NCBI GenBank assembly: GCA_002269645.1
Contig: NIVC01001215.1
Coordinates: 1 to 64,000, forward strand
DNA from: Macrostomum lignano
Lineage: Eukaryota
Direction of reading: 5' to 3'
Length of the DNA stretch: 64,000 bases
Part shown: positions 16,901 to 63,993 of the stretch, one piece after another
Numbering within the stretch: the first letter of the stretch is position 1
Layout: each line of letters begins with the position of its first letter
Program-made: the position numbers and the translations under genes
The notes under the pieces: generated by a model
Databases searched by the model: none
Seen by the model: only the letters and a program-made list of their open reading frames with translations
What the model was told of the DNA's origin: nothing

Positions 16901-19900
16901 CTTGGCTGTCGGAGTGGATGACAATAGTCTTTCCTCTCGTAACCTTGGCGTTTAGCTCTGCAGCGCAAGAGCTGATGGCAAGGACTTCGTTCTGGAAGAC
17001 TGTGGAGAGTCTACCAGTGTGCTGGGCATGCGTGGCAATTACGCGGCCGTTGATGATGATGCAGACCCCAAAGCCGGCGCGACCGTCTTTGATGGATCCG
17101 TCCGTGTAGCAATGGACCTCCTGGAAATTCCAGTGGTCATTGGCAGCATCCCTAGAGGGGATGGTGACCTTGTAGCGCTGAAAGAGGTTGAGAGTGCGGG
17201 GTTCGCCGTCAGATAGGACGTGGAGCCCGCCGCTGTCTCTCAAGTCCTTGAGGCAGAGGTCAGCGTGGGGCAGAAGCTTGCGCTTAGCCATGGCCCTATG
17301 GGGCTGGATTCGAATGCCAGCGTCAGCTAGACGGCGGGCAGTCTTAGCCGCTTCCCTGCGGACAAAGATGTCCAGCGGAGGAATGTTGAGGAAGGCGTTG
17401 AGGCCATCGTAAGGAGCAGACGGAGGGGCGCTCATGATCGTGCGACAAGCGCGCCCTTGCGCTCTCCTGAGAGCCTCTAGACAGGTCTTTATCTGCAGGG
17501 CGCTAGCCCAGATCAGGCCGCCATACGAGATAGCGGGCCTAACCATTGCAGTGTAGATCCACCAGAGGCGCTTGGGGGTGAGCCCCCAGGTGGTGCCGAC
17601 GGCCCTGCGCAATTGCGCGAGGACTGCGAAGGCCTTTTTGGCTTTTGTTTGAACGTGGGGAGACCAGTTCAGCCTGTGGTCCAGGGTAATACCCAGACAT
17701 TTAGTCTGCTTGCAGAAGGGGATTTCCCTTCCGTAAAGCGTGAGCGGCCGAATCTGCCACTTGGTCCTGCTGGTGAACATGATCGCTGCGGTCTTAGTCT
17801 CAGAGAGCCTTAAACCACAGCGGTCCGCCCATTGCTCAGCAGCGTAGATGAAGTTCTGAAGAAGGTCCCTGAGGGTATCAGGGGACGGACCAGATGCCAC
17901 CGCGGTGACATCGTCCGCATATCCAACTTTCAGAATGGGGTCAGGCCGAACATCCCGGAGGAGCTCATCGATGACCATATTCCAGAGAACTGGAGACAGC
18001 ACCCCACCTTGCGGGCTACCTTTGCAGACGGGGACCGTCCTCTGGTAGCCCAGCAGACTGGCGGTGGCCGTGCGATGGCTGATCATGTACATGATCCATC
18101 TGGTGAGATGTGAGTGCGTTAGCCTCTCACAAAGAGCTCTTCGGAACGCCTCAAAGAGGACGTTATCGAAGGCGCCAATGATGTCCAGGAAGATCCCCAG
18201 AGCAAAGCCACTACCAAGCACGGCCTTCTCGAGTTTATCGACCAGGACGTGCAGCGCGCTTTCAGTGGAGCGACCCGCCCGAAAAGCGTGCTGGTTCTCG
18301 CTGAGAGGTTTGTTCTTCAGCTCAACAGAGAGAAGGCGCCAAAGCACCAGTCTCTCCATCAGCTTGACCAGGGAGGAGGTCAAGCTGATCGGTCTGAAGG
18401 ATTTGATAGAATGGTAGTCCGGGCGGCCTGGCTTAGGGATAAAGATCACCTTTGCCTCGGTCCATGCCTGCGGGACATAACCAAGCGTGATGCATGCCCG
18501 AAGAAGGCTGCAAAGTTTGCGCAGGAAGCCTGGGCATTTAACCGCCTCTCTTAGAAGGGCCGGTACAATGCCGTCGGGTCCTGGGGCTTTGAAAGGCTTG
18601 AAGGAATTTGCCGCTCTCACAATGCGGTCCTCCGTGATGATAGATGCAGCCAGCGCGTGACCTCCCTCCGAGTGATCCGGAGTGGTCTGGTTAGCTGGCT
18701 CGTTAGGGAAAAACGCAGTGAGCATTACATCAAGCGTTTCCCCTGGGTTGTCCGTGGACGTACCGTCGGTGCGTTTGACCGAGGAGAGCTTAGACATTTT
18801 GTCCAGCGTGAGCGCTTTCACAACTCTGGAGGTGGGGCGTGAGCCCTCTAGCTCCTCACAGTATTGTCGCCATTTTTGAGCCTTTTTGAGCCAAACTGCG
18901 GCCAGTCAATGGTTGCTGTGAAGTTCAATGGGATCACAGCTGAGCTTTCCATCTTCATTGTGGACAATTCAAGTGCTGCAAGCATCTACGGCCTCGAGTG
19001 GATGCGTAAGTTGGAACCGGAGCTCAATATTTATCAGGTCAAAAACTTTAAAGCACACCTAACGCTGAAGGAAGGTTCAACGCCTGTGTTCTTCAAGCCA
19101 AGGCCGCTGCCATATGGTCTGAGGCACAGTGTGAAGAAGAGTTGGATAGAATGGAAAAAGATATGATTTTAAAGAAGGTAGACCAGAGCAAGTGGGCCAC
19201 GCCAATTGTCTGCGTTAGGAAACAAAATGGAAGGATAAGACTCTGCGGCGACTATAAGGTGACTAAATAAATTTCTCTGTGACATGGTTTCCACGACTCC
19301 TAGCATCGAGGACGTGCTTCACCGTATGGAATAGGTGCAGTACTAGAGCTATCCAAGGGACCTGTCTTGTTCATCTCCAAGACTCTCAGCCAGGCCGAGC
19401 GAAATTATGCACAGATAGGGCGTGAAGCTCTAGCGATTGTGTGGACCGTGAAGCGACTACGCAAATATCTGTTCGCTCGAAAGTTTACTTTGGTGACTGA
19501 CCACCGTCCACTTAAGTATATATTCGATCCAGCCAAGAGCATCAATAGTCTCGCAACGGCTAGAATTCAGCGTTGGGCAGTTGCTCTTATGTCTTATGAC
19601 TACGAAGTAGAGTGCCGTCGGTCAGAAGAGATTCCAGTAGCCGACGCACTGTCCAGATTAAGATCAACGAAGGCCGATTTGCAACAATTTGACGTAAGCT
19701 CAGTTCAGGACACCCTACTTGTGGAAAAGTTGTACTTGTGGAAATTTCTTTTTTGATCGAAAAAAAGAAATTCGTCAACAGTCGCTGAAGGACGCTATAA
19801 TGCGAAGGCTTTTCGCCCAAGTCAAGCATGGTTGGACCGAGACTGGAAGACGTCAGCTTCAGGAATATGCCAGGTTCGAAAATGAAATGTCCATTAAAAG

Positions 19901-31750: not shown

Positions 31751-32579
31751 TAGAGTCAGTGGAATGGAAACCCTACACCCTTATCGTGAAATTTTACATT
31801 TTCAGCCGTCCAGGTGTACTTTTCCAGAGGTGTCTGGTCACAGACATTATTTTAAAAATTCCTGCAGTTAGAGGAGAAATCTGCAAGTCGCTACTCACAA
31901 GTAGCGCATTCCGTGCGATATTTGTATAGAATTGTCTTGTGTAGAAACTCGAATGTGTGCCGAGATGAAGGCAAATTTTTTCCACTCCCGCATAAGTCGT
32001 GTTTGCTGATTTCCTTCCGAAATTGCCGCAGATTATGAGTTATTCCTCTATTGCTTGATTTACAATGACAGAAACTGATTTGATTGCTTTGATTGAAATA
32101 ATTATGCTACTTTTCTATGCATTCCACTGATTGTAGGTCAGAATGAGAATCGTTTTTATCATTTTTAACAGATGGTCTATGGAATTCTTTGATTCCGCTC
32201 AGTGCAATGTCTTCCTGTATGTGTGCTCTGTGCAATGTCCTTTTGGATAATCAGCTTTTTTATATAATTATATAATTTACTATTTATTGACCTCGGTTTC
32301 TCCTCTACCTGCGCTGTACACTCGTATGTACAAGATATATAGAAAATCGTTGAAAATAAATGAAATTTTTATGAGCCGCACCTACGGTCAGGAAGTTTTA
32401 ATTAAACCACAGCAACCAGCTTGCTTGCAAGCGGCAACTGCTGGGTGCATGCTCTTGAATCAGAGTTCGATAAATATGACTCGAATTCTTACTGTTTTTA
32501 AGCACTGAGCTCAGAAGACTTTGGTTTGAATCGGCGAAATGCTCCAGTAAAATTCGGAAGCAGAAGGAACAGAAGTAGG

Positions 32580-34365
32580 AGACAACAGCAAGAGTGCTAG
32601 GAAGGACAACAGTAAGAGTGCTAGGAAGGACAACAGCAAGAGTGCTAGGAAGGACAACAGCAAGAGTGCTAGGAAGGACAACAGCAAGAGTGCTAGGAAG
32701 GACAACAGCAAGAGTGCTAGGAAGGACAACAGCAAGAGTGCTAGGAAGGACAACAGCAAGAGTGCTAGGCAGACAACAGCAAGAGTGCTAGGAAGGACAG
32801 CAGCAAGAGTGCTAGGAAGGACAACAGCAAGAGTGCTAGGAAGGACAACAGCAAGAGTGCTAGGAAGGACAACAGCAAGAGTGCTAGGAAGGACAACAGC
32901 AAGAGTGCTAGGAAGGACAACAGCAAGAGTGCTAGGAAGGACAACAGCAAGAGTGCTAGGAAGACAACAGCAAGAGTGCCAGGAAGGACAACAGCAAGAG
33001 TGCTAGGAAGACAACAGCAAGAGGGTTAGGCAGACAACAGCAAGAGGGTTAGGCAGACAACAGCAAGAGTGCTAGGCAGACAACAGCAAGAGTGCTAGGC
33101 AGACAACAGCAAGAGTGTTACGGCGGCAACAGCAAGAGTGCTGGGAAGACAACAGCAAGAGTGTTACGGCGGCAACAGCAAGAGTGCTAGGAAGACAACA
33201 GCAAGAGTGTTACAGCGGCAACAGCAAGAGTGCTAGGAAGACAACAGCAAGAGTGCTAGGAAGACAACAGCAAGAGGGTTAGGCAGACAACAGCAAGAGT
33301 GCTAGGAAGGACAACAGCAAGAGTGCTAGGAAGGACAACAGCAAGAGTGCTAGGAAGGACAACAGCAAGAGTGCTAGGCAGACAACAGCAAGAGTGTTAC
33401 GGCGGCAACAGCAAGAGTGCTAGGAAGACAACAGCAAGAGTGTTACGGCGGCAACAGCAAAAGTGCTAGGAAGACAACAGCAAGAGTGCTAGTAAGACAA
33501 CAGCAAGAGGGTTAGGCAGACAACAGCAAGAGTGCTAGGCAGACAACAGCAAGAGTGCTAGGCAGACAACAGCAAGAGTGCTAGGCAGACAACAGCAAGA
33601 GTGTTACGGCAGCAACAGCAAGAGTGCTAGGAAGACAACAGCAAGAGTGTTACGGCGGCAACAGCAAGAGTGCTAGGAAGACAACAGCAAGAGTGCTAGG
33701 AAGACAACAGCAAGAGTGTTACGGCGGCAACAGCAAGAATGCTAGGCAGACAACAGCAAGAGTGCTAGGCGGACAACAGCAAGAGTGTTACGGCGGCAAC
33801 AGCAAGAATGCTAGGCAGACAACAGCAAGAGTGCTAGGCAGACAACAGCAAGAGTGCTAGGCAGACAACAGCAAGAGTGCTAGGCGGACAACAGCAAGAG
33901 TGCTAGGAAGGACAACAGCAAGAGTGCTATGAAGACAACAGCAAGAGTGCTAGGAAGAGAACAGCAAGAGTGCTAGGCGGACAACAGCAAGAGTGCTAGG
34001 AAGACAACAGCAAGAGTGCTAGGAAGACAACAGCAAGAGTGCTAGGAAGACAACAGCAAGAGTGCTAGAAAGAGAACAGCAAGAGTGCTAGGCGGACAAC
34101 AGCAAGAGTGCTAGGAAGACAACAGCAAGAGTGCTAGGAAGACAACAGCAAGAGTGCTAGGAAGACAACAGCAAGAGTGCTAGGAAGAGAACAGCAAGAG
34201 TGCTAGGCGGACAACAGCAAGAGTGCTAGGAAGACAACAGCAAGAGTGCTAGGAAGACAACAGCAAGAGTGCTAGGAAGACAACAGCAAGAGTGTTACGG
34301 CGGCAACAGCAAGAGTGCTAGGCGGACAACAGCAAGAGTGTTACGGCGGCAACAGCAAGAATGCT
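32580..34365. repeat. 20/21-bp minisatellite (acaacagcaagagtgctaggaagg and variants)
   Basis: Direct reading. Confidence 0.96.
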
Positions 34366-36916
34366 ATGAAGGCAAACAAGAATTAAGAAAATTTATTTTT
34401 CATATTTTACTTTCTTTAAAAGAACACATCAATTGAAAATCCAAACTGCTTATTATAAAATCAACGAATTCTAGTTTTTTAAAAATATTTTCCTCATAAA
34501 ATCCAACCTTCATCAAGAACACAATCCCCGGCCCACCGCCATTGCTGTCTCAGTCCATTGCGTCAGCCTCAGTCCGTGAGCCCCACAATACACAGCAAGA
34601 ATTCTTCAGTCCAGGGCCCCAAAAGCCCAGCCCCCTATGCGTCACCGTCCCTCTTCGGTGACACAAGACAATGGGCTCCGAGGGTCCCCTTCTACTTTGT
34701 TCTGTTCTGTATGTGGTGAGGGGGCCTTGGGGTCTAAAGTTCTCCCACACTGTGTGGGCCAGAGCCAATAGTTCGGCAAGAACGGGGGTGTACACTGAGT
34801 CACACCCTCTGGATGACTGGTCCAAGCGAGCCGGCCTCCCCCTGTCATAGCTTGCAATATTCGATTACGTAATCAGCCGTGTGGTGGAGCGGGGCGGCCT
34901 TGATGGGCCTCTCTCTCTCTGTTTCTCTCCACTCTCTCGTGACTGCCGAGGGTTTGGAGAGAGAGGCACAGCAGGGGGAGGGGTGCCTCTGACTGGCCGG
35001 GGGCGTTGCGTAACCCTCCCCAGCCCGGCACCCCTCCCGGGCCGCGGAGCAGGGCGCACAGTCATCGCATGGGGGGGGGGTGGGGGGTTTCGATTGTCAG
35101 AGCCGCCACCCCCTCCCCCGCCGCCGGGCCATAAAACAGCCGGCCCGGCCGCGGCTGCCATTTTCTTTCGCTGCGCCCCCCTCTCTCGCTTTGTCTCTCC
35201 GTCTCCAGCCGGCTCCCGAGTGCCGGACTCCCCAGGTAAGTCTGCCATGTCCGCGGACTGTCCCTCGCCATCTCAGGCGCTTCAAATGTCCACGTGAGAA
35301 TTGTTTGAGTTGCTTGAAGATCCACGTGGCCAGTTGAAGCTCTTCGCTGTGGCGAGATTTTGCATCTGATCCCCCTGTGTCATAACTCCCTGGTCTGCTC
35401 ATAAGTCATAACCCTGCTTGTCTGCTTGTGTATTCGATGCCGCAGTGTACTCGTGCTTGTTTGCTCTGCTCATCAATACATTGTTCAACCGGAGAATTGC
35501 TAGAGTCACTATTTGTCCGTGCAATGCATTGCGATACTCGTTAAATAATAAATTAGAGCTGCGAGTAGTACGAACACGTAAAGAATGCCTTGCTTTCTTG
35601 TTATTTTAAACTTGCAACAGATGTCAACTTTGTCAGAATTGACGAAATTGTTTCGGAACTTGGCATGTAGTTTAAATTGAACTTAACCTACGATAGATTT
35701 CCTCTTTACTGATATGCAAAGTAGCCATACCATATTTTCAGTTTATTAACTTAACTATTCCAAGTATTTGGACTATTTTTCACACACTAGCAGGGTACAT
35801 AAACTACATACTGAATGCATGCATCATTTACTTCTCGTCTGCTCTTGGCTTTCTTCTTTACACAGTGTTGCAGCTGTGACTGACTGACTACTGACCGCAT
35901 AAAATTTTCCTTCCAGTTTTTTCGATCTAAGGAAGGAAATTAGGCACAAAATATCGCTTCAGTCTACTTGTAGTAGCATCAGTTGTAAAATATGTGGTTA
36001 AATCCTAAATATACGGTGATATTTTAGGAAATCTGTCGTTTTTATTTAATAGCGTCACTTTATCGAGCAGATGTCACAGTGCGTTCGTTTTATCACCACA
36101 ATCGCACTGGTCAGGGACTGCAGGCTAATTGAATAGCCATGAAATACATCCTGACCATTAAGCCTTTGGTTTTAATCGCTGCCCAATATAAGCATGATCA
36201 AATAGGCTTTGGACATGAGCTTTTGGTATATTGAAGTAAATAGGCTACAGTCAATTCCAGGTTGGTCAAATGATGCTTTTCTCAGTCAAAGCCACTCATT
36301 AGTCTCTGATTTTAAATTTGAAAATATCATTCAAAGTTGAATGTACTGTAGATAAAATGGAGAAAAACGGCATGGATGGATGGATCTGATGAAAGCACGT
36401 GACGAATTCGACTGAACTCGGCAAGTTCAGCTGAGCTGCGCCAAGTTCCGCCAAGTCGCTCATCCAACAGAGATTGACATCTTTCATAAAGTGAAAAGCA
36501 TCCACAGCTGAAGTCCTGTCTTACAGTCACTTATAGATTGCTAGCTCTTGGACACATGCAGCTCATACAGCCCATGAGACCTTTGTGCACCTGACCCAGG
36601 CATTGAGCCAGGCATTTCTATTCCAATTGCCAATTTAGGGAATGCAAGTCAGTCAGGCCGATATAAGAAAAATAAAAACAGAAAAATGCCTGACAGGAAG
36701 CCTGCCGTGCGCAGAACCGCACGGGTGGCCTCGGCTGCGTCTGCTGAGCTGCCTCGCATTCTGAGTCTCAGCTGGGCTCGGTTCCTTTCCGAACTCGACA
36801 GCCCCGCATTTGCGCAGCTGGCTGCTTAAATGAGCGCAAAAGCTGCCCGACTGAGTAGGGACTGCGAGCCTCTTCTGGATTTCTTAGAGAGCTCAGCTCA
36901 ACAAAGATCCGTTGCC

Positions 36917-38268: not shown

Positions 38269-41200
38269 TCACATGATTGACTCAGAATCATTTGCGCCAG
38301 CCATAGCCTTCTTGTTAGCCTCAGCCTCAGCCTTAGCCTCAGACTTAGCCTTAGCCTCAGCCTTAGCCTTGGCGCTGTCCACAGCCCTGGCAACCGCGGC
38401 ATCGTCCAGCAGCAGGCGGGTCTCCTCGGCGAACTCCGCGGCCCGGTGCGCCAGCTCGTAGACGCTCCTCGGAGCTCCATCGGCGGTGCGCAGCCGCTGC
38501 ACCTTCTCCTCCAGCGCGTCGATCTCCAGCTGCATGGCGTGCTTCTCCTCGTTGACCGACCAGACCCACAGGATGATCCAGGCGCCCTCGCTGCTCAGAA
38601 TCCTGTGCTCACGCTCAACCAGGCACCTGGCCTCCTCATTCTTGTTGTCCATCGCCGCTGGGAAGAAGCTCAACTTTTTGTTTCTGTCGAAATGCTTCCT
38701 GAGGTCTTCGCTTAGCGACTCCACAGTGCATTTGCTCGACCCGGCTTGATACAAAGCGACCTGCTTCTCCATTTCGGCTTCTGAGTGGTCTTTGTAGGCG
38801 CTGCTCTTCTTGTACGCGAATGGAAAGTACATCACAGGGCGAAAGTGCACACTTGACTGAACTTCCAAATTGAAATTCTTCCAGGCGTGGTCCACGGCCT
38901 TGTGCGAGTTCTCCAGCGTGACCTTGAGCACCTTTGTCTCTTTCTCGCGCTCTGCTTTGATGTGATGCCGCGTCACTTTAAGCAGATCTTTTCGCGGGTA
39001 CTTGTCCAGCCCCAGAGCCTTCTTGACCTCCTTGCAGAGCGTCTTGAACTTGCGCTCGGCATCTTGTTGGGCCTTTCTGTACTCATCGTGCATCTGGCTG
39101 CTGGATTCCCCGTCCGAGCCCTTGGCCGGTTTGTACTGCATTCGCTTCTTGATGAAGAACGAACTGCTGCTGGTTTTTAAGTTCAGCAGCCGAGCTGCCA
39201 GCTCGTACTGCGCCTGCTGGTGCAGTAGTGGCTCAGTCTGAGGAGCATCTGGCACAGCCTGGGGAACATCTGACACAGCCTGAGTAGCAATATCTGACAC
39301 AGCCTGAGGAGGAGCATCTGACACAGCTTGAGGAGGAGCATCTGACACAGCGTGCAGCACAGCTAGTAAGCTTTCGGCAACACTATCTCTTGTTGTTCGT
39401 TCCTTCACATCTTGAAGAAATTTCTTGACTAAGTCAGCAGCATTCTTGCACTCCAGCAAAAGACATTTTACCAGCCCATCTTGCTTCTCCTTGAAGCTCA
39501 GCCGCTGCCATCGGCTCTCCAGCATGAACAAAACTGAGTCCGCAATGAGCGCACTCCTGTGATTCAGTTTTTCGTCGAGTGTCTCAAACAGTTTTATTGC
39601 TTCGTCGAATTGCTCTGCTTCTAGAAGAAGAATTCCGAGCTGCTCAGTAGACAGCTGGTGATTCGGTTCTGCCTGAAGGCACTCTGTGTAAGCTCGTATC
39701 GCCGATTCAGTGAGCTGTCGGGCCCCTTCAAAGTTGCCCACTTTTCTTTCGCACTTCGCCCGGACAGACTGGCGCAGAGCGTGGAAACATTTCGCCTCGA
39801 AGTCTGTCTTGTGCCCAAGCAGAGTCTCCAAATTCCGCCATTTGAACGGACTGAGGCAGCCTCTGACGTTCGGCACCTCATCCTGAGCATACTCATTCAG
39901 AGCCCATGCGATGCACTCCACACCCTGAGCCACCCGACCCACCGTGGCCAGAAAGTAGCCCTTCTCCGCCAGTATTTGGGCTGAGTGGGACGGCCTCAAA
40001 TTTCTCAGCCGCAGCGAGTCGTAGCGCTGGCAGATCCAGGCGACGTGCTCCTCCTTGGTCCGAGCTGTGCCAGCGGTGGCTCCGATCCCAGCTGCAGTCA
40101 GCACGCCATAAAATGCGAAAACACTATGGCGGCCAGGATTCCTGCGGCTTGAATTGAGTCGGTGGCAACAATGGCTACAGCAACGGCCAGGACCGCCATA
40201 GCAGAAATGATTCCTGGGTGGAAGACGGCCAAGCTGACTCCAGACTCTGTGTCCGCGCTTGACACGGCTGGGTCCTGGATCAAGTCAATCAGATATTTCG
40301 CCGCCCAGATGTTCCTCTCAGGAGCTGCTTTCCTGAAGTTCTTGATAGCCAAGCCAAAGTTTTTGTTGCTAAGGTGCCAGCGCGCCACTTGGTCATAAAA
40401 ATCCGGGCTGTCGTGAGATTCGCCAGGCTGAAACTTTAAAACAGTTGCAACCACCTGCTCCACAGAGCGGATGATCTCGTTTTCTTCTGCAGTTCTCTCT
40501 GACTTCGCGTTCTTGCCGCCTCTCAAGTCCCATAAAATTCTGCAGACCTTGAGGCAAAGCCTGAATGTCTCTACCAGTCCCGGATCTGTCTTGGAGCGGC
40601 AGGAATTGCTGGCGCTCTCCACCAGCTCCAAGCACTTGCTGTGCATTTGGTCCTTGCTGATGATTGCTTCGGCGTACCGTGCCTGGAAAAGAGGTCGCAC
40701 CTGGTCGTAGGCCGGCTTGCTCGCGCTGGCTTCCGCTTTTTCCCATAGCTTCAGCTCCGGACCGTCAGCCGAGCTGATGAAGTCTCGGTTCCTGCGAATC
40801 CTGGATCTGACAATCGCGAGACCGAAGAGCCAGAGAAAGTTCTCCGGCTCTTTCGCATTTGCTTCTTTTAGAAAGTCTTCGACTTCGAAGAGCTTTGAGT
40901 AGCCCAGGCGCAGCTTGATCCAGCCGATGGATCCGTGGAACATAGCGGATGTGTCGGGTCGGCCCCACTCAGCCTCCAACTCAGCGACATCATCTTTCCA
41001 ACCTACTGGGAAGCCGTTGCAACTTTGCAGTAATTTTATTCTCAGCCGAGCTGTCTTGATCAGGTATGTAGCGTCTACGAAATTGAAATAATTTGGAGAA
41101 TTTTGCAGCTTCTCGGCTTCAGTCAGGATCTCCAGACTCTTCGGCAGGTCCACAACAGCCTGGTGAGTGTGCAGCAGCGCAAGAGCCACCAGGTGCACCG

Positions 41201-41306
41201 TCTCCAGCCACGGCTCGCTCTGCCTCTTCCACTTGAACTTCTCAATCAAGTCTGTGACGTCACTGAGCTGGCTGATGTCGGGGAGCCGCTGGAAGTGGCT
41301 GTCCAT
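38269..41306 (-). CDS. IFIT-like TPR protein with central two-TM segment and HEPN-like C-terminal domain (~1012 aa if one T is restored at 40118-40121)
   Basis: DSHF, LVALALLH..SLEILTEAE and GWIKLRLG..FLKEANAKEPEN..FGLAI parallel IFIT N-terminal TPRs; ORFs 40098-41306 and 38269-40104 join by a one-base change. Confidence 0.7.
39240..39355 (-). repeat. In-frame 24-bp repeat (AVSDAPPQ-like x4) within the IFIT-like gene
   Basis: gagcatctgacacagcctga variants. Confidence 0.85.
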
Positions 41307-41715
41307 GACGTTCGAAGCGGTCTCGGCTCCTCCAGTGCGTTGGTTGCGGAGTCGGCCGAAAGCATTGCAGATAGAGAGCTGCTCACAGCAGATATGTACT
41401 GCTGCCCTGTACTCAGGACTCTGCTCAAGACAGGAACAATAGAGACCTCTGCCGCCAGTCTCAGACTGCAGTGCAGTGCAATTGGGCAGCTGGGGGTTGG
41501 CATACGGTTTCTATTGCTAGCGGCAGTGCAGTACAGTACAGCACAGTACAGTACAGTACAGTACACCGCTGCGGAGTGAAAACACAGACGGGAACTTCAT
41601 TCCAGCCAGCGACTGCAGCTAGGGGTGTGAGATTGTAGCACACTTTTGCTCTCCAAATTTGATTTCACTGGTTTAGGTGCATAACTATTTTCTTCTATTA
41701 TCTTTGAAACTAAAT

Positions 41716-42430
41716 GCTCGGAGATTACAGTGCGTGAATGTCTTATCACAGCTTGTGAATGCTCGGAGATTACCGTGCGTGAATATTCTATCACAGCTTG
41801 TGAATGCTCGGAGATTACAGTGTGTGAATATCCTATCACAGCTTGTGAATGCTCGGAGATTACAGTGTGTGAATATTCTATCGCAGCTTGTGAATGCTCG
41901 GAGATTACCGTGCGTGAATATTCTATCACAGCTTGTGAATGCTCGGAGATTACAGTGTGTGAATATTCTATCACAGCTTGTGAATGCTCGGAGATTACCG
42001 TGCGTGAATATTCTATCACAGCTTGTGAATGCTCGGAGATTACAGTGTGTGAATATCCTATCACAGCTTGTGAATGCTCGGAGATTACCGTGCGTGAATA
42101 TTCTATCACAGCTTGTGAATGCTCGGAGATTACAGTGTGTGAATATTCTATCGCAGCTTGTGAATGCTCGGAGATTACCGTGCGTGAATATTCTATCACA
42201 GCTTGTGAATGCTCGGAGATTACAGTGTGTGAATATCCTATCACAGCTTGTGAATGCTCGGAGATTACCGTGCGTGAATATTCTATCGCAGCTTGTGAAT
42301 GCTCGGAAATTACAGTGTGTGAATATCCTATCACAGCTTGTGAATGCCCGGAGATTACAGTGCGTGAATGTCTTATCACAGCTTGTGAATGCTCGGAGAT
42401 TACAGTGTGTGAATATCTTATCACAGCTTG
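41716..42430. repeat. 45-bp minisatellite, about 16 copies
   Basis: atgctcggagattacagtgtgtgaatatcctatcacagcttgtga. Confidence 0.96.
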
Positions 42431-43794: not shown

Positions 43795-46420
43795 ATGGCC
43801 GAAATTGAGAAGCTGCTCATCTGCGCTGCTGTCTTCTGTAAGCTCGAACTCCAGTGCTTATTCTATGCGGATTTTACCTACTAGATTTACAGACTCAATT
43901 TGAATAATTCTTTCCTCTTTCAGTGCTCCAGGCAAACCTGGCAAGCACCGACTGCTACAACGGCACTCACTTTAACGTCAGGCCGGGTTTTCCGACAAAA
44001 ATGCCCAAGTGCACCCCGACCACGGCCGGAAATTGCTACGAGATTTTGCACAAATTCACTGAGTCTTTGGTGAGTGTTTGGTCGTATTTGCAGTGACCAA
44101 CCTGCCGCTGGCTCCCCTGCACTGCTGCTGACTCCCTGCACTGCTGCTGGCTCCCCTTCACTGCTTCTGGCTCCCTGCACTGCTGCTGGCTCCCCTTCAC
44201 TGCTTCTGGCTCCCTGCACTGCTGCTGGCTCCCTGCACTGCTGCTGGCTCCCTGCACTGCTGCTGGCTCCCTGCACTGCTGCTGGCTCCCTGCACTGCTG
44301 ATGACTCCCCTGCACTGCTGCTTGCTCCCTGCACTGCTGCTGGCTCCCTGCACTGCTGCTTGCTCCCTGCACTGCTGCTGGCTCCCTGCACTGCTGCTGG
44401 CTCCTCTCAAGCTCAGCTTCAACACCTGTTGATTTCAGAGACTGTTTATGGGCTGCGACAAATGCCCTGACGCAATAAAGAGCGTGAAGTACGACTTTGG
44501 AGCAAAAAAGTTAACCATTTCCGACTGCTCGGAGACCTCCGGCTCCGGCCTGTCCAACACCAAGTGGGGGAACAAGATTAAGAGCTATGTTCTCCAATCT
44601 GAGGTCTGCTCATTTGAGGACGCAACCGGCTCGAAAGGCACCATTCTCTGCAAGCCCAAGGAGAATTGCATGGCGGCCGTCATGTCGACCACCCCGAAGG
44701 TAAGAGGGCTCAGTGAGCAGTAGGATGAGACCTGCAATAGACCTTGCAAGCCACCCTACAAGCCACTCTACAAGCCACTCTACAAGCCACCCTAAAAGGT
44801 ACCCTACAAGCCACGCTACAAGGTACCTTATAAGCCACCCTACAAGCCACTCTACAAGCCACCCTACAAGCCACTCTACAAGCCACTCTACAAGCCACCC
44901 TACAAGGTACCCTACAAGCCAACCTACAAGGTACCCTACAAGCCACCCTACAAGCCACCCTACAAGCCACCCTACAAGCCACCCTACAAGCCACTCTACA
45001 AGCCACCCTACAAGCCACTCTACAAGCCACTCTACAAGCCACCCTAAAAGGTACCCTACAAGGTATCCTACAAGCCACCCTACAAGGTACCCTACAAGCC
45101 ACCCTACAAGCCACCCTACAAGGTACCCTACAAGCCACCCTACAAGCCACCCTACAAGCCACCCTACAAGGTACCCTACAAGCCACCCTACAAGCCACCC
45201 TACAAGCCACTCTACAAGCCACCCTACAAGCCACTCTACAAGCCACTCTACAAGCCACCCTAAAAGGTACCCTACAAGGTACCCTACAAGCCACCCTACA
45301 AGGTACCCTACAAGCCACCCTACAAGCCACCCTACAAGGTACCCTACAAGCCACCCTACAAGCCACCCTACAAGGTACCCTACAAGCCACCCTACAAGCC
45401 ACCCTACAAGGTACCCTACAAGCCACCCTACAAGCCAACCTACAAGGTACCCTACAAGCCACCCTACAAGCCAACCTACAAGGTACCCTACAAGCCACCC
45501 TACAAGCCACTCTACAAGCCACCCTACAAGCCACTCTACAAGCCACTCTACAAGCCACCCTAAAAGGTACCCTACAAGGTATCCTACAAGCCACCCTACA
45601 AGGTACCCTACAAGCCACTCTACAAGCCACCCTACAAGCCACTCTACAAGCCACTCTACAAGCCACCCTAAAAGGTACCCTACAAGGTATCCTACAAGCC
45701 ACCCTACAAGGTACCCTACAAGCCACCCTACAAGCCACCCTACAAGGTACCCTACAAGCCACCCTACAAGCCACCCTACAAGGTACCCTACAAGCCACCC
45801 TACAAGCCACCCTACAAGCCACTCTACAAGCCACCCTACAAGCCACCCTACAAGGTACCCTACAAGCCACCCTACAAGCCACCCTACAAGCCACCCTACA
45901 AGCCACCCTACAAGGTACCCTACAAGCCACCCTACAAGCCACCCTACAAGCCACCCTACAAGCCACTCTACAAGCCACTCTACAAGCCACCCTACAAGCC
46001 ACCCTACAAGGTACCCTACAAGCCACCCTACAAGCCACCCTACAAGCCACCCTACAAGCCACCCTACAAGCCACCCTACAAGCCACCCTACAAGCCACCC
46101 TAGAATCCACCCTACAAGCCACCCTACAAGCCACCCTACAAGGTACCCTACAAGCCACCCTACAAGCCACCCTACAATCCACCGTACCGCCCTGCCTGCC
46201 TGTTCGGCAGAAGCGGTTCCGCGGCTGCGCCAGCAACTGCAAGGAATTCAAGCTGTCGGACTGTCGGGAGTGCAAAGAGAAAAGCTGCGACCACCCAGCG
46301 TTCGACTCGGCTGGCAATTACATAAAAAAATCCGGCGCCATGCAGCGCGCCGCCAAGACTCAAATGGCGCTCGGCGTGCTGTTCGCCGCTGCGGTTCGCT
46401 GCGTCGTGGCGCGAATTTGA
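43795..46420 (+). CDS. Secreted, probably GPI-anchored Cys-rich Ly6/uPAR-like protein with two domains (219 aa); exons 43795-43837, 43924-44069, 44439-44699, 46211-46420
   Basis: Manual splice gives 660 nt in frame; signal peptide; ...RGCASNC..DCRECKEKSCD; hydrophobic C-terminal tail. Confidence 0.75.
44100..44400. repeat. 19-bp intronic minisatellite (gctgctggctccctgcact)
   Basis: Direct reading. Confidence 0.93.
44740..46180. repeat. 12-bp intronic minisatellite (ccctacaagcca / ccctacaaggta)
   Basis: Direct reading. Confidence 0.97.
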
Positions 46421-50414: not shown

Positions 50415-56230
<5,816 letters not shown>

Positions 56231-57594: not shown

Positions 57595-59210
57595 TTCAGA
57601 CTCAGACACCAACTGGGCGAGACTCGGACACCAACTGGGCGAGACTCAGACACCAACTGGCTGAGACTCAGACACCAACTGGGTGAGACAGACACCAACT
57701 GGCTGAGACTCAGACACCAACTGGGCGAGACAGACACCAACTGGGCGAGGCTCAGACACCAACTGGATGAGACTCAGACACCAACTGGGCGAGACTCAGG
57801 CACCAACTGGATGAGACTCAGACACCAACTGGGCGAGATTCAGACACCAACTGGGTGAGACTCAGACACCAAATGAGTGAGACTCAGACACCAAGTGAGA
57901 GAGACTCAGACACCAACTGGCTGAGACTCAAACACCAACTGACTGAGACTCAGACACCAACTGGGTAAGACTCAGACACCAAGTGAGTGAGACTCAGACA
58001 CCAACTGGGTGAGACAGACACCAACTGGGTGAGACAGACACCAACTATGTGAGACTCAGACACCAACTGGGTGAGACAGACACCAACTGGGTGAGACAGA
58101 CACCAACTGGGTGAGACAGACACCAACTATGTGAGACTCAGACACCAACTGAGTGAGACTCAGACACCAAGTGAGTGAGACTCAGACACCAAGTGAGTGA
58201 GACTCAGACACCAAGTGAGTGAGACTCAGACACCAAGTGAGTGAGACTCAGACACCAAGTGAGTGAGACTCAGACACCAACTGAGTGAGACTCAGACACC
58301 AAGTGAGTGAGACTCAGACACCAAGTGAGTGAGACTCAGACACCAAGTGAGTGAGACTCAGACACCAAGTGAGTGAGACTCAGACACCAAGTGAGTGAGA
58401 CTCAGACACCAAGTGAGTGAGACTCAGACACCAACTGAGTGAGACTCAGACACCAACTGAGTGAGACTCAGACACCAAGTGAGTGAGACTCAGACACCAA
58501 GTGAGTGAGACTCAGACACCAAGTGAGTGAGACTCAGACACCAACTGAGTGAGACTCAGACACCAAGTGAGTGAGACTCAGACACCAAGTGAGTGAGACT
58601 CAGACACCAAGTGAGTGAGACTCAGACACCAAGTGAGTGAGACTCAGACACCAACTGAGTGAGACTCAGACACCAACTGAGTGAGACTCAGACACCAAGT
58701 GAGTGAGACTCAGACACCAAGTGAGTGAGACTCAGACACCAAGTGAGTGAGACTCAGACACCAACTGAGTGAGACTCAGACACCAACTGAGTGAGACTCA
58801 GACACCAAGTGAGTGAGACTCAGACACCAAGTGAGTGAGACTCAGACACCAAGTGAGTGAGACTCAGACACCAAGTGAGTGAGACTCAGACACCAACTGA
58901 GTGAGACTCAGACACCAAGTGAGTGAGACTCAGACACCAAGTGAGTGAGACTCAGACACCAAGTGAGTGAGACTCAGACACCAAGTGAGTGAGACTCAGA
59001 CACCAACTGAGTAAGACTCAGACACCAACTGAGTGAGACTCAGACACCAAGTGAGTGAGACTCAGACACCAAGTGAGTGAGACTCAGACACCAAGTGAGT
59101 GAGACTCAGACACCAACTGAGTGAGACTCAGACACCAACTGAGTGAAACTCAGACACCAACTGAGTGAGACTCAGACACCAAGTGACTGAGACTCAGACA
59201 CCAACATGGC
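57595..59210. repeat. 22-bp minisatellite (gagactcagacaccaagtgagt and variants)
   Basis: Direct reading. Confidence 0.97.
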
Positions 59211-61025: not shown

Positions 61026-63993
61026 CTACTTGGCCTCGGCCTTTGGCGGGTTGATCTTGACCACCAGCACCAGGTAGTACAGCCAGTAGAAGCAGTTGTA
61101 CAGCAGGAAGCAGGCGGGAAACAGGAAGCGGCTGTACGCGTCGATGTCCGAGTCCGGCGCGGGCACTGGCGAGGCTGGCGGCGCGCCGCCTTTGCCGCCG
61201 CCACTGACGCCGCCGCCGACGCCGCCCTCTTCAACGCTGACAGCCAGGAGATCCTCGAGCTCCTCCGGGAAGCCGGGATAGCCGTGGCCGCCGCCGATGT
61301 GGCCGCACGGCAGGCCGGGCGGCGGGCCGCGGATGACGGCGAGGCGCTGCAGCTCGGAGCGGACGACGTTGCGGATCTCCTGCTGCCAGCTCTCCATCTT
61401 GGTGCGCCGCGCCCGGAAGGAGGCCACGGCGAACTCGATGAGGGCGCCGATGACGAACATGATGCTGGCGATGATCCAGATGTCGATGGCCTTGATGTAG
61501 GCAACCCTGCGAAGGCGGCGGGGCAGAGGGTTAGTCAGGTAGACTGAATAAAAAAGGCACTGCAGAGCCCTGTTTGATATTTTCTGCTTTTTTCAACACA
61601 ACCTCAGTGTTGTGCCCTTTTAGCAGTGTTGCATTCTCAAGTTTATCAGTTTAGAAGTTTGCAAAAATCAGCAAATTCTCGGAGTTGAAAATCCCGATCT
61701 CTCCTCTGCAAATTGGCCTGCCGCGACGCGGTCCTTGTAGAAAAATTTCTGGGGCACAGGGCGAATTGAGAAGGCAAACTGAGCAAACTGAGTGACTCCT
61801 GAGGCTGCTTAGGCCCTGCCCTGCTCCATAAATCAGGAGCCACCACAGCAAGCAGGCTTGAAAGCTGACGAAGCCACAGGAAGAAGCAGCTTAGACACTT
61901 AATCTGAGATCAGCGGAGGGGATTTATGACGCCCTCATTCTGCACTTTCTGCCGAACTCAGCGATAGGACCAGGATTAAGCCAGACTGAGCAGCTCAGCC
62001 CAGAGTGCTGGCAGCCCCATCAACCCCGCAGCAGCCCCAGAGACTCCCCGGACTCGTGCCGTGGGCGATAAAATTGAGTTTTTAGCAGTCTTTAATCAGC
62101 CAGCGAGATCTGGCAGCCAGTGCTAATGAGAACTGCTCAGCCCGGACTCGCCGGCGCCAAGGGCTCCGTGAGGACTTTGATCTCACCGGCCTCACCCTCG
62201 ATCCTTGCCCAGATTCTTTATTACTCATTGAGGCGAACAGTCAAGACCTCTTTAATCGGGCACCCTTTGTGTGAAGTTAGCGGTCGCTTAAAACAGTCGG
62301 AAAAGGAGATTCATTTGATTAATCACTTTGTAGCAGACCTGTGTGAGACCTGCAGAACTGTGTGAGACCTGCAGAACTGTGTGAGACCTGCAGACCTGTG
62401 TGAGACCCGCAGACCTGTGTGAGACCTGCAGAACTGTGTGAGACCTGCAGAACTGTGTGAGACCTGCAGAACTGTGTGAGACCTGCAGAACTGTGTGAGA
62501 CCTGCAGAACTGTGTGAGACCTGCAGAACTGTGTGAGACCTGCAGAACTGTGTGAGACCTGCAGAACTGTGTGAGACCTGCAGACCTGTGTGAGACCTGC
62601 AGAACTGTGTGAGACCTGCAGAACTGTGTGAGACCTGCAGAACTGTGTGAGACCTGCAGAACTGTGTGAGACCTGCAGAACTGTGTGAGACCTGCAGAAC
62701 TGTGTGAGACCTGCAGAACTGTGTGAGACCTGCAGAACTGTGTGAGACCTGCAGAACTGTGTGAGACCTGCAGAACTGTGTGAGACCTGCAGAACTGTGT
62801 GAGACCTGCAGAACTGTGTGAGACCTGCAGAACTGTGTGAGACCTGCAGAACTGTGTGAGACCTGCAGTCCCTCCTACCTGTGTGAGAGCTGCAGACCTG
62901 TGTGAGACCTGCAGCCCCCTCCTCCTGTTGTATCAGCACCTGCTACTTGGGCAGATTGGCCATCAAGGTAGATGCCTAGGAGAGTCTGCAGTCCCTACCT
63001 GGGCAGGTTGGCCATCACGGTGGATGCCTGGGTGAGGATACCCAACAGGGTGAGCAGGCCCAGCGTAACCCGAGCGGGCACGGCTTCTATATTGACCCAG
63101 AAGCTGAGCCAGCTGACGGCAATGATGAGGATGGCGGGGATGTAGGTGCCGGCCAGGTAGCTGCTCAGCTGCCGCTCCAGCTTGAAGATCGCCTTCAGGC
63201 ACGCGTAGCTCCCTGTGCTGGTCGCGCTGCCCTGCGTGCAGTCCTCCACAATGGCGAAGTCGGGTGTGTTGAACTCGGAAATCTGCATGGAGCCGTCCAG
63301 CTCCACCGGGTCTTTCAACCCGTCCCGCTTCCACTTGAACAGCAGGTTCCTCGTGGTGTATCCGTAGCTGCCGATGTTCACGAAGCACGTCTGTGTGTCC
63401 ATGGGAAATGTCTGCAACTGCATCTGGCACGAGAACTTCATGGTAACCTTCTGCGAATACAGGATCTGCCCGTCGGGCTCAACTCTGATCAGATAGTTAG
63501 GCTGAGTCATGGTGTGCAGGTAACCCTCCTTTCCATTACGGAAGAACAGGTCTGGAAGCCACAGGTGCTCCTTCTTGGCGGGGATGGCGATGGACTCGTT
63601 GTAGAAACTGAAGTCTTTGCGATGATCCCAGCGCAGCCGCGTGTCCTTCCAGAACTGACGCAGGTACATGTCCAGCGTAAACTCCATGTTGATGACGTCC
63701 ACCTTGTTGATGCTGAGAATCTTCATGTTGACGTCCACGGCCGTGGATGGCTGCACCGGCTTGCTGGAGCCGGACACGTCTGGGGCGGGCTCAGCCGGCT
63801 GGCCGTCCGGCTTCGGCGGCATCTCCACCGGCCGCTGGTGCTTATTGTAGCCGCGGAAGATCGCCTCCACGATGCGGTCCACGATGTTGGTGTAGTTCGG
63901 CCGAACTGACCCGCTGGTCGGCTGAATCTCCTCGGTGGCGAACACAGCAGCGACCGCCAGCAGGGCTGGCAGCAGGCGGCACCAAAAGTGCAT
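61026..63993 (-). CDS. Cys-loop ligand-gated chloride channel subunit (flatworm GluCl / GlyR-like); exons 63993-62999 and 61506-61026
   Basis: Signal peptide; WLPDLFFRNG; Cys-loop CQMQLQTFPMDTQTC; loop C cysteine pair; anion-selective PAR before M2; joined LPR-VAYIKAIDIW; M4 IDAYSRFLFPACF. Confidence 0.93.
62335..62930. repeat. 19-bp intronic minisatellite (gacctgcagaactgtgtga)
   Basis: Direct reading. Confidence 0.96.

What the first reader, a model, noticed from the sequence alone, without database searches (positions are those of the whole stretch)
40350..41306. IFIT-like N-terminal TPR region in a probable flatworm
Seen versus recalled IFIT5: DSHF (LECHF), LVALALLH..SLEILTEAE (LLAYVKH..ALECLEQAE), GWIKLRLG (GWALLKFG), KEANAKEPENFLWLFGLAI (EKALEVEPDNPEFNIGYAI). 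Established: IFITs are best known as interferon-induced vertebrate genes with a largely single-exon CDS, as seen here.
Basis: partly seen in the sequence, partly recalled or inferred. Interest (0 to 1): 0.7.

Follow-up and report, generated by a model that had tools for sequence, protein, structure and literature searches.

The report
Flatworm gene with IFIT-like N-terminal domain
The start of a roughly 1,000-residue protein of the flatworm Macrostomum lignano resembles, in sequence profile and predicted fold, the RNA-sensing antiviral IFIT proteins so far described only from jawed vertebrates, so IFIT-type domains may be older than the interferon system.

Summary
Alignment programs pair those strings with the same blocks of human IFIT5.

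The window is the first 64 kb of Macrostomum lignano contig NIVC01001215.1. The ORF is the front part of a roughly 1,012-codon gene. In this copy a one-base difference in a T-run (40118-40121) breaks the frame. An intact, intron-free copy, 98.9% identical, lies about 95 kb away.

The window protein alone has no significant IFIT match. An exhaustive search found only three distant paralogues, all from M. lignano. One of them carries the exact IFIT hallmark CHFTW at the equivalent N-terminal position. Two others have an RRM in front of the domain.

- **Sequence profile:** the four-sequence profile has IFIT5 as its best PDB hit (E 1.8e-4). It matches a vertebrate IFIT profile end to end (hhalign 97%, P 1e-10). 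It does not resemble consensus TPR over residues 1-200.
- **Predicted fold:** the AlphaFold model's best Foldseek hits are IFIT5 and IFIT1 (TM 0.5-0.6). Other TPR proteins reach at most 0.43.
- **RNA pocket:** it is only partly kept. The R186 equivalent is invariant, the K150 equivalent is probably basic, and E33, T37 and Q41 are lost.

Verdict: a divergent IFIT-like domain in a new multidomain flatworm family. Function is inferred, not shown.

The parts
40098..41306 (-). ORF1 (402 aa, ATG at 41306, TGA at 40100-40098). It is the front part of the gene as it reads in this copy. It holds the IFIT-like domain and the first half of a hydrophobic insert.
   Evidence: It is identical to database protein P0001 and 97.6% identical to the annotated sister copy PAA70671.1.
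40725..41306 (-). Residues 1-194, the confidently IFIT-like core. It aligns colinearly with IFIT5 residues 12-210 (subdomain I plus the first half of subdomain II).
   Evidence: HMMER profile against IFIT5, E 1.8e-4. hhalign against an IFIT profile, 97%, P 9.8e-11. Controls.
41292..41303 (-). DSHF (residues 2-5), the degenerate counterpart of the IFIT hallmark CHFTW. F5 is invariant in the flatworm family, and paralogue P0002 has the exact CHFTW.
   Evidence: CHFTW is described as invariant in IFITs in PMC11462223.
40791..40910 (-). Segment holding the basic residues conserved across the family: R133 (40908-40910), K138 (40893-40895), R169 (40800-40802) and R172 (40791-40793). R169 aligns with IFIT5 R186 in every alignment. 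R133 aligns with IFIT5 K150 in two of three alignments.
   Evidence: The roles of K150 and R186 are taken from PMC9677429.
40269..40724 (-). Residues 195-346, further helical repeats of the N-terminal domain. They include one generic TPR-like unit near residues 300-345. Alignment to IFIT here is of low confidence.
   Evidence: AlphaFold model, all helical, pLDDT 78.8..
40063..40244 (-). Hydrophobic insert of about 60 residues, a predicted two-helix membrane hairpin. It is found only in this paralogue pair and spans the frameshift.
   Evidence: Kyte-Doolittle windows above 1.6 at residues 355-412 of the intact copy, and none in P0002, P0003 or P0004. Sequence.
40118..40121 (-). Run of four T (sense strand) where the intact sister copy has five. 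This one-base difference splits the gene into ORF1 and ORF2.
38269..40104 (-). ORF2 (611 codons in another frame, TGA at 38271-38269), the rest of the same gene. It holds middle TPRs, a coding minisatellite, a K/E-rich helical region and a conserved C-terminal domain.
39562..39708 (-). Canonical-looking TPR pair in the middle region.
   Evidence: Pfam TPR_19 at 23.2 bits, below the 25-bit cut-off. Paralogue P0002 passes TPR_2, TPR_8, TPR_14 and TPR_19 in the equivalent region.
39240..39351 (-). 24-bp tandem repeat inside the coding sequence, encoding (AVSDAPPQ)n. It is 276 nt longer in the sister copy.
38404..38736 (-). Conserved C-terminal domain of unknown fold (EREHRILS..W..W..N.EKH...AHxAAEFAEET). 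It is shared with P0002 and P0004.
   Evidence: No hit in Pfam, PADLOC, NCBIfam or the PDB. The AlphaFold model is unusable, pLDDT 44.8.

Best explanation
**What it is.** The finding is the N-terminal domain of a gene family so far seen only in Macrostomum lignano. The members are intron-free ORFs of about 930-1,120 codons. The first 200 or so residues, and probably the first 345, form a divergent IFIT-type TPR domain. It has the short N-terminal element carrying the CHFTW-type motif, followed by TPR hairpins in the same order as IFIT subdomain I and the start of subdomain II.

**What follows the domain.** Behind it come more ordinary TPRs, a coding minisatellite, a charged helical region and a conserved C-terminal domain of unknown fold. 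This paralogue pair also carries a hydrophobic insert of about 60 residues that would tether the protein to a membrane, with both flanks on the same side.

**How it probably works (inferred, not shown).** The domain acts as a TPR clamp or scaffold that binds RNA or an RNA-protein partner. It would use the conserved basic residues R133, K138, R169 and R172, as IFITs use K150 and R186. The C-terminal domain would supply a second, unknown activity. RRM fusions in two paralogues point to RNA. An antiviral or RNA-surveillance role is a reasonable guess and nothing more.

**State of the window copy.** It has a one-base frameshift in a T-run. It is therefore either a mis-assembled or a recently disabled copy of an otherwise constrained gene.
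For: **Shown**
- The gene and family are real. An exhaustive phmmer search finds P0002, P0003 and P0004 at E 2e-7 to 1e-5 in 1.8 billion proteins, all from M. lignano.
- N- and C-terminal domains are conserved across paralogues of about 25% identity.
- The sister copy is an uninterrupted ORF of 1,122 codons. pN/pS between the two copies is 0.24-0.29.
- P0002 has the exact CHFTW at residues 12-16. This motif is described as invariant in IFITs (PMC11462223).
- The family profile has IFIT5 as its best PDB hit, E 1.8e-4, profile 7-187 against IFIT5 13-188.
- With filters off, the same HMM scores IFITs of human, frogs, paddlefish and catshark at E 1e-4 to 1e-2.
- hhalign against 22 vertebrate IFITs gives 97%, P 9.8e-11. 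The same register appears without P0002 (P 1.5e-4) and for the window sequence alone (P 9e-4).
- Residues 1-118 and 119-200 match IFIT (P 5e-7 and 2e-5) but not consensus TPR (P 0.12 and 0.07). Reversed controls give P about 0.4-0.5.
- The real helix order beats all 60 block permutations.
- The AlphaFold model (pLDDT 78.8, pTM 0.78) has IFIT5 as Foldseek rank 1. IFIT chains give TMq 0.42-0.60, against 0.21-0.43 for other TPR proteins.
- R169 aligns with IFIT5 R186 in all alignments.
- RRM_1 scores above Pfam's cut-off in P0003 and P0004.

**Inferred**
- RNA binding, membrane tethering and any immune role.
Against: - The window protein alone has no significant IFIT match.
- The HMMER link vanishes without P0002.
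- The alignments have only 3-4 sequences (Neff about 2).
- TPR proteins are prone to spurious profile matches. Block-permuted controls still reach P about 5e-7.
- Foldseek E-values for IFITs (3e-4) are barely better than for designed TPRs or OGT (7-9e-4).
- AlphaFold, run with a shallow alignment, could have been drawn towards a remembered IFIT fold.
- IFIT5 pocket residues E33, T37 and Q41 are not kept (D16, L20, F24). Y250, R253 and Y254 are not kept in a low-confidence extension. The K150 equivalence depends on how a 6-residue indel is placed.
- The window protein lacks the helix in front of the motif unless an upstream exon exists.
- The architecture, about 1,000 residues with extra domains, is unlike IFITs of about 480 residues.
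Confidence: 0.6

Rival explanations
1. It is a generic TPR scaffold protein, and the IFIT resemblance is convergent or an artefact of repeat-protein statistics. The domain would mediate protein-protein contacts unrelated to RNA or defence, and the CHFTW in one paralogue would be coincidence.
For: - No Pfam family passes threshold in the window ORFs.
- The window sequence alone gives no IFIT hit.
- Leaving out P0002 removes the HMMER hit.
- Permuted-block controls still score P 5e-7 to 1e-3 against IFIT.
- The middle region matches bacterial LapB and consensus TPR as well as anything else.
- Many non-IFIT TPR proteins have Foldseek E-values within about tenfold of IFIT5.
- Most RNA-pocket residues are absent.
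Against: - Residues 1-200 do not resemble consensus TPR (P 0.07-0.12) but do resemble IFIT in two separate blocks, each in the colinear register.
- The true order scores 80.5, against a maximum of 55.6 in 60 permutations.
- IFITs have the highest TM-scores and 14 of the top 25 structural hits.
- An exact CHFTW at the matching N-terminal position, in a protein chosen only for its similarity to the window ORF, has a chance expectation of roughly 1e-7. This is my estimate from amino-acid frequencies, not a computed result.
Confidence: 0.25
2. The window copy itself is a dead gene. The one-base deletion in the T-run is real, so this locus makes only a truncated 402-residue product or nothing, and function resides in the sister copy about 95 kb away.
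For: - The frame break is in the assembled sequence.
- A TT indel near the stop and a 276-nt repeat contraction also distinguish this copy.
- M. lignano carries many duplicated genes, so the loss of one copy would be tolerated. This is general knowledge, not tested here.
Against: - The difference is a T4/T5 homopolymer length, a typical residual error of long-read assemblies.
- There are no other stops or frameshifts in 3 kb.
- pN/pS between the copies is 0.24-0.29, so the copy was constrained until very recently.
Confidence: 0.35
3. The family is not an old animal gene. It would be a gene carried by, or captured from, a mobile element or a foreign source, which would explain the intron-free long ORFs, the multiple copies and the absence from other animals.
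For: - Both genes examined are single uninterrupted ORFs.
- The window is full of retroelement ORFs and satellites.
- No homologue outside M. lignano was found among 1.8 billion representatives.
Against: - There is no reverse transcriptase, integrase or terminal repeat next to the gene.
- The paralogues are only about 25% identical and have different architectures (RRM fusions, hairpin insert), which implies long residence and diversification in the lineage.
- No bacterial, viral or defence-system family matches.
- The gene duplicated together with its neighbours as a segment.
Confidence: 0.05

Closest known systems
[quoted passage not shown]
   Same: - Best sequence-profile and best structural match.
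- The alignment is colinear from the N-terminus through subdomain I and the first half of subdomain II.
- The hallmark motif position is kept: F is invariant, and the full CHFTW is present in paralogue P0002.
- The EPxN..G.A TPR block is kept.
- The R186 equivalent is invariant, and there is a basic residue at or next to the K150 position.
- The coding sequence is essentially single-exon.
   Different: - Only 13-16% identity.
- The protein is 1,000-1,120 residues rather than about 480, with extra TPRs, a coding minisatellite, a novel C-terminal domain and, in this pair, a hydrophobic hairpin.
- E33, T37 and Q41 are not conserved, and Y250, R253 and Y254 apparently are not either.
- About 50-60 residues are inserted relative to IFIT5 around residues 240-292.
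- Flatworms have no interferon system (established knowledge), so regulation must differ.
- IFITs are reported only from jawed vertebrates (PMC3688568).
Generic TPR superhelices (designed CTPR proteins, OGT TPR domain, Tom70, APC/C subunits, LapB)
   Same: - All-helical hairpin repeats.
- Residues 300-345 and the middle region (ORF2 residues 115-200) match consensus TPR, LapB and PEX5 weakly.
- P0002 passes Pfam TPR_2, TPR_8, TPR_14 and TPR_19.
   Different: - Residues 1-200 give P 0.07-0.12 against consensus TPR.
- TM-scores to these proteins are 0.21-0.43, against 0.42-0.60 for IFITs.
RRM-containing RNA-binding proteins (relevant to paralogues P0003 and P0004 only)
   Same: P0003 and P0004 carry an N-terminal RRM_1 above Pfam's threshold, and probably a second RRM, directly in front of the IFIT-like domain.
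   Different: The window gene and P0002 have no RRM. The fusion is circumstantial evidence for an RNA-related role and says nothing about family membership.

Membership tests
IFIT family | N-terminal pentapeptide CHFTW in the loop between the two non-TPR helices, described as invariant in IFITs (PMC11462223). | tested here: inconclusive
   The window protein has DSHFQR at residues 2-7: H and F are kept, while C, T and W are not. F is invariant in the flatworm family. Paralogue P0002 has the exact LECHFTW, and P0003 and P0004 have (N/S)PFKW.
IFIT family | Sequence similarity to IFITs that is significant and stronger than to other TPR families. | tested here: met
   It is met at family-profile level: IFIT5 is the best PDB hit at E 1.8e-4, hhalign gives P 9.8e-11 against 3e-3 for consensus TPR, and the real order beats all permutation controls. 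It is not met by the window sequence alone.
IFIT family | IFIT fold: subdomains I, II, pivot and III forming a clamp, rather than a regular TPR superhelix. | tested here: inconclusive
   The model of residues 1-347 is closest to IFIT5 and IFIT1 (rank 1; TMq up to 0.60; TMt 0.67 to the IFIT1 N-terminal fragment 4HOU). The E-value margin over other TPR proteins is small. The pivot and subdomain III could not be mapped, and no coordinates were available to inspect.
IFIT family | RNA 5'-end pocket residues (IFIT5 E33, T37, Q41, K150, Y156, R186, Y250, R253, Y254, R260; PMC9677429). | tested here: not met
   - R186 aligns with the invariant R169.
- K150 aligns with the R133/K column in two of three alignments.
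- Y156 aligns with Y in three paralogues but L139 in the window protein.
- E33, T37 and Q41 align with D16, L20 and F24.
- Y250, R253 and Y254 are not conserved in a low-confidence alignment.
IFIT family | Size and architecture: about 450-500 residues made almost entirely of TPRs. | tested here: not met
   The proteins are 1,012-1,122 residues, with a hydrophobic insert, a minisatellite-encoded repeat, a charged region and a distinct C-terminal domain.
IFIT family | Induction by interferon or virus (ISRE promoter) and antiviral activity. | not testable with these tools
   No expression data are available here. Flatworms lack interferon (established knowledge).
IFIT family | Phylogenetic placement with IFITs relative to other TPR families. 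| not tested
TPR superfamily (Pfam clan) | At least one repeat passing a Pfam TPR model's gathering threshold. | tested here: inconclusive
   In the window gene the best hit is TPR_19 at 23.2 bits against a cut-off of 25. Paralogue P0002 passes TPR_2 (38.6 against 27), TPR_8, TPR_14 and TPR_19.

The most novel reading that the evidence does not exclude
The Macrostomum family is a true deep-branching relative of vertebrate IFITs. On this reading, an IFIT-type clamp that binds RNA 5' ends existed in the bilaterian ancestor, before interferon. In this flatworm it was built into larger sensor-effector proteins: RRM fusions, membrane-anchored forms, and a C-terminal domain acting as an unknown effector. 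These proteins would work in RNA surveillance or antiviral defence.
Probability: 0.25. Interest if true: 0.8.

Novelty: new variant of a known kind. Interest (0 to 1): 0.62.

Why it matters
IFITs are among the best-studied interferon effectors, and the systematic survey I could find places their origin in jawed vertebrates. It rejected the invertebrate TPR candidates it examined (PMC3688568). My searches of the held literature found no paper that links IFITs to flatworms.

Several other interferon-stimulated effectors, Mx for example (PMC11789081), have recently turned out to be much older than interferon. A flatworm family with an IFIT-like N-terminal domain would extend that pattern to IFITs. 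The case rests on the hallmark motif being exact in one paralogue and on RRM fusions in two others.

Macrostomum lignano can be cultured, supports RNAi and is transgenic-capable, so the hypothesis could be tested directly. The family also offers a new C-terminal domain with no recognisable relatives.

Tried and rejected
1. **A GT..AG intron joining ORF1 and ORF2.** I listed 54 frame-restoring candidates. For a while I favoured a 212-nt intron that removes the hydrophobic stretch, because P0002 and P0004 lack that stretch. I rejected it. The sister copy reads straight through the region as one ORF and differs only by T5 against T4.
2. **The word-indexed homology search.** With the ORF and with the family alignment it returned only the protein itself. 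Only the exhaustive phmmer search found the paralogues.
3. **HEPN idea for the C-terminal domain.** P0004 has RNKAEH, an Rx4-6H-like motif, but the Arg is V in the window protein and in P0002. No Pfam, PADLOC, NCBIfam or PDB hit supports the idea. The AlphaFold model was unusable (pLDDT 44.8), so no fold search was run on it. The idea is left as unsupported.
4. **A longer profile (A6) against the PDB.** It did not list IFIT5. This turned out to be a filter effect, because with filters off the same HMM scores IFIT5 at 24.2 bits, E 1.3e-4.
5. **Mapping the second half of the IFIT pocket.** I tried permissive and global hhalign settings. The alignment is of too low confidence to rely on.
6. **Literature searches for invertebrate or flatworm IFITs.** They found nothing relevant.
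Full report
**1. What is in the sequence**

On the minus strand an ATG-initiated ORF runs from 41306 to 40098 (402 aa).

A second ORF of 611 codons follows immediately, from 40104 to 38269, in another frame on the same strand. The window is the first 64 kb of contig NIVC01001215.1 of assembly GCA_002269645.1. Proteins annotated on that contig are named Macrostomum lignano, a free-living macrostomorph flatworm. The guess 'probable flatworm' is therefore right.

**2. Gene structure**

The two ORFs are one gene. Homologue P0002 (1,062 aa) matches ORF1 with its N-terminus and ORF2 with its C-terminus.

A second copy lies about 95 kb away on the same contig, at record positions 135634-139002. It has the same two neighbouring gene calls and is one uninterrupted ORF of 1,122 codons. 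It is annotated as PAA70671.1, 'hypothetical protein, partial'.

The two copies are 98.86% identical in DNA and differ by three indels:
- T4 against T5 at window 40118-40121.
- A 276-nt length difference in a coding 24-bp minisatellite that encodes (AVSDAPPQ)n.
- A TT indel near the stop.

The T-run difference is what separates ORF1 from ORF2. I first considered an intron, listing 54 GT..AG candidates, but the intact copy reads straight through, so I dropped that idea. Whether the frameshift is an assembly error or a real lesion cannot be decided without reads. pN/pS between the copies is 0.29 for ORF1 and 0.24 for ORF2, so the sequence has evolved as a coding gene. P0002's gene is also a single ORF of 1,125 codons.

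**3. The family**

The window ORF has no significant Pfam domain and no PDB sequence match apart from noise. The word-indexed search found only the protein itself.

The exhaustive phmmer run over 1.84 billion cluster representatives found just three further proteins. All are from M. lignano:

| Protein | E-value | Length |
|---|---|---|
| P0002 | 1.9e-7 | 1,062 aa |
| P0003 | 3.5e-6 | 509 aa |
| P0004 | 9.8e-6 | 928 aa |

They are about 22-26% identical to the window protein. They share an N-terminal domain of roughly 270-350 residues. The full-length ones also share a C-terminal domain with the motifs REHRILS..W..W..N.EKH and AHxAAEFAEET.

P0003 and P0004 carry RRM_1 above Pfam's threshold in front of the shared domain. 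P0002 passes several TPR models in its middle region.

The window gene and its sister copy alone have a strongly hydrophobic insert of about 60 residues. It shows two Kyte-Doolittle peaks, at residues 355-412 of the intact copy, and looks like a membrane hairpin.

**4. Test of the IFIT resemblance by sequence**

P0002 begins MSNLEKLEELECHFTWLPEDG. CHFTW is the pentapeptide described as invariant in all IFITs. It sits in the loop between the two N-terminal non-TPR helices (PMC11462223). The window protein has DSHF at that place, and P0003 and P0004 have (N/S)PFKW. The Phe is invariant.

A profile of the four N-terminal domains (A2), searched against all PDB sequences, has human IFIT5 as its best hit at E 1.8e-4. 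All other hits are generic TPRs that match only positions of about 300-345.

I then gathered 39 vertebrate IFIT N-terminal sequences, using the IFIT5 segment printed as the query, and aligned 22 of them as A4. The hhalign comparisons against A4 were as follows.

| Query against the IFIT profile A4 | Result |
|---|---|
| A2, four flatworm sequences | 97.0%, P 9.8e-11, 193 columns, Q14-218 against T11-209 |
| A3, without P0002 | same register, P 1.5e-4 |
| Window sequence alone | P 9e-4, GWIKLRLG on GWALLKFG |

The controls were as follows.

| Control | Result |
|---|---|
| Reversed profiles | P 0.38-0.48 |
| A2 against an 8-repeat consensus TPR | P 3e-3, positions 312-351 only |
| Residues 1-118 against IFIT / consensus TPR | P 5e-7 / 0.12 |
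| Residues 119-200 against IFIT / consensus TPR | P 2e-5 / 0.07 |
| 60 permutations of the 17 helix blocks | maximum score 55.6, median 36.8, real order 80.5 |

The IFIT profile itself matches consensus TPR at P 2e-15, so it is the flatworm side that departs from the TPR consensus. With HMMER's filters off, the A2 and A6 models score IFITs from human, frogs, paddlefish and catshark at E 1e-4 to 1e-2 for a database the size of the PDB.

There are weak points. Without P0002, HMMER finds no IFIT at all. P0002 alone hits only consensus TPR at residues 391-424. The alignments are very shallow.

**5. Test by structure**

AlphaFold2, run with the four-sequence alignment, gave an all-helical model of residues 1-347 with mean pLDDT 78.8 and pTM 0.78. 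I searched it with Foldseek against the PDB:
- Rank 1 is IFIT5 (4HOT_A), E 3.1e-4, TMq 0.51.
- 14 of the top 25 hits are IFIT1 or IFIT5 chains.
- The best TM-scores are IFIT1 5W5H_C (TMq 0.60, rmsd 5.9) and the IFIT1 N-terminal fragment 4HOU_A (TMt 0.67).
- Designed TPRs, OGT, BBS4, Tom70, APC/C subunits and TTC5 have similar E-values but TMq of 0.21-0.43.

The margin in E-value is small, however, and a shallow-alignment model may lean on folds the network has already seen.

**6. Functional residues**

The IFIT5 RNA-binding residues are listed in PMC9677429. There, K150 is the strongest contributor, followed by R253 and R186. The mapping is below.

| IFIT5 residue | Flatworm counterpart |
|---|---|
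| R186 | R169, invariant, in all three alignments; it opens a very basic stretch (window VRSRIRRNR) |
| K150 | conserved basic column (window R133, K in the paralogues) in the HMMER and single-sequence alignments; shifted by a 6-residue indel in the profile-profile alignment |
| Y156 | Tyr in three paralogues, L139 in the window protein |
| E33, T37, Q41 | D16, L20, F24, not conserved |
| Y250, R253, Y254 | not conserved, in a low-confidence extension |

The IFIT pocket is therefore at best half preserved. Binding of RNA 5' ends cannot be assumed.

**7. Interpretation**

The most likely reading (about 0.6) is that the N-terminal domain is a remote relative of the IFIT N-terminal region, embedded in a larger protein family of its lineage.

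RNA involvement is suggested by three things: the IFIT link, the conserved basic residues and the RRM fusions. None of them is direct evidence.

The main rival (about 0.25) is a generic TPR scaffold with a coincidental or convergent resemblance. A mobile-element or foreign origin is unlikely (about 0.05). A separate question is whether this particular copy is broken; I put about 0.35 on the frameshift being real.

The C-terminal domain remains uncharacterised:
- No family or PDB hit.
- An unusable model, pLDDT 44.8.
- A HEPN-like RNKAEH motif in P0004 that is not conserved in the window protein or in P0002.

**8. Comparison with what is known, and novelty**

Liu et al. 2013 (PMC3688568) found IFITs from elephant shark upwards. 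They rejected the lancelet, acorn-worm, lamprey and hagfish TPR candidates. They also describe the typical gene structure, in which almost the whole coding sequence lies in one exon. I found no paper that connects IFITs with flatworms or other invertebrates.

The proteins here are annotated only as 'hypothetical' or 'RRM domain-containing'. I therefore rate the finding as a new variant of a known kind. It has an IFIT-like domain in a new architecture and an unexpected phylum. It fails several IFIT membership criteria (size, pocket residues), and others remain untested (induction, phylogeny).

Noticed in passing
window 671-5735 (minus strand): There are ORFs of a Ty3/gypsy-type LTR retrotransposon. 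One is a 1,314-aa pol with RVT_1, RNase H, an integrase zinc-binding domain and rve. Beside it is a gag-like ORF with a CCHC zinc knuckle.
   Followed up: partly
window 16227-18821 (minus strand); 15049-15891 (plus strand): A second retroelement ORF (864 aa, RVT_1 plus RNase_H) lies here, with a nearby ORF that carries a zinc knuckle.
   Followed up: partly
window 62995-63993 (minus strand): This ORF encodes a Cys-loop ligand-gated ion channel: Neur_chan_LBD at E 2e-44, plus the start of the transmembrane region. It is probably one exon of a neurotransmitter receptor gene.
   Followed up: partly
whole window, e.g. 32576-34375, 44747-46187, 50503-51463, 52454-53590, 57598-59205: The density of tandem repeats is extraordinary: 44 TRF rows. 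Examples are 23 bp x 77, 12 bp x 120, (ATAG)240, 27 bp x 42 and 22 bp x 74. Many of the long 'ORFs' in the mechanical ORF list are just these arrays read in several frames.
   Followed up: no
window 41713-42430: A 45-bp x 16 tandem array lies about 400 bp upstream of the gene's ATG. It is open in four frames, which gives spurious ORFs of 233-297 aa. I did not examine whether it has any regulatory role.
   Followed up: no
L001 against L002 (NIVC01001215.1 about 30-51 kb and about 130-145 kb): The gene and both neighbouring gene calls (258 aa, and 165 or 166 aa) occur twice on the same contig in opposite orientation. This is either an inverted segmental duplication or collapsed or expanded homeologous sequence in this hidden-polyploid genome.
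   Followed up: partly
window 39240-39351, and L002: A coding minisatellite encoding (AVSDAPPQ)n differs by 276 nt (92 codons) between the two copies. The annotated protein PAA70671.1 differs again from its own locus in repeat number.
   Followed up: partly
protein P0007 (UniRef A0A1I8JIK7, 4,203 aa, named 'AMP deaminase'): This protein is in the same 90% cluster as P0002. It is probably a chimeric gene model from an older assembly that fuses a P0002-like gene to neighbouring genes.
   Followed up: no
window 41307-41366 (minus strand, upstream of the ATG): The reading frame stays open for 20 or more codons upstream of the ATG, with no other ATG. The GenBank protein of the sister copy is flagged as partial at its 5' end. 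The window protein also lacks the short helix that precedes the CHFTW-type motif in P0002 and in IFITs, so an upstream exon cannot be excluded.
   Followed up: no
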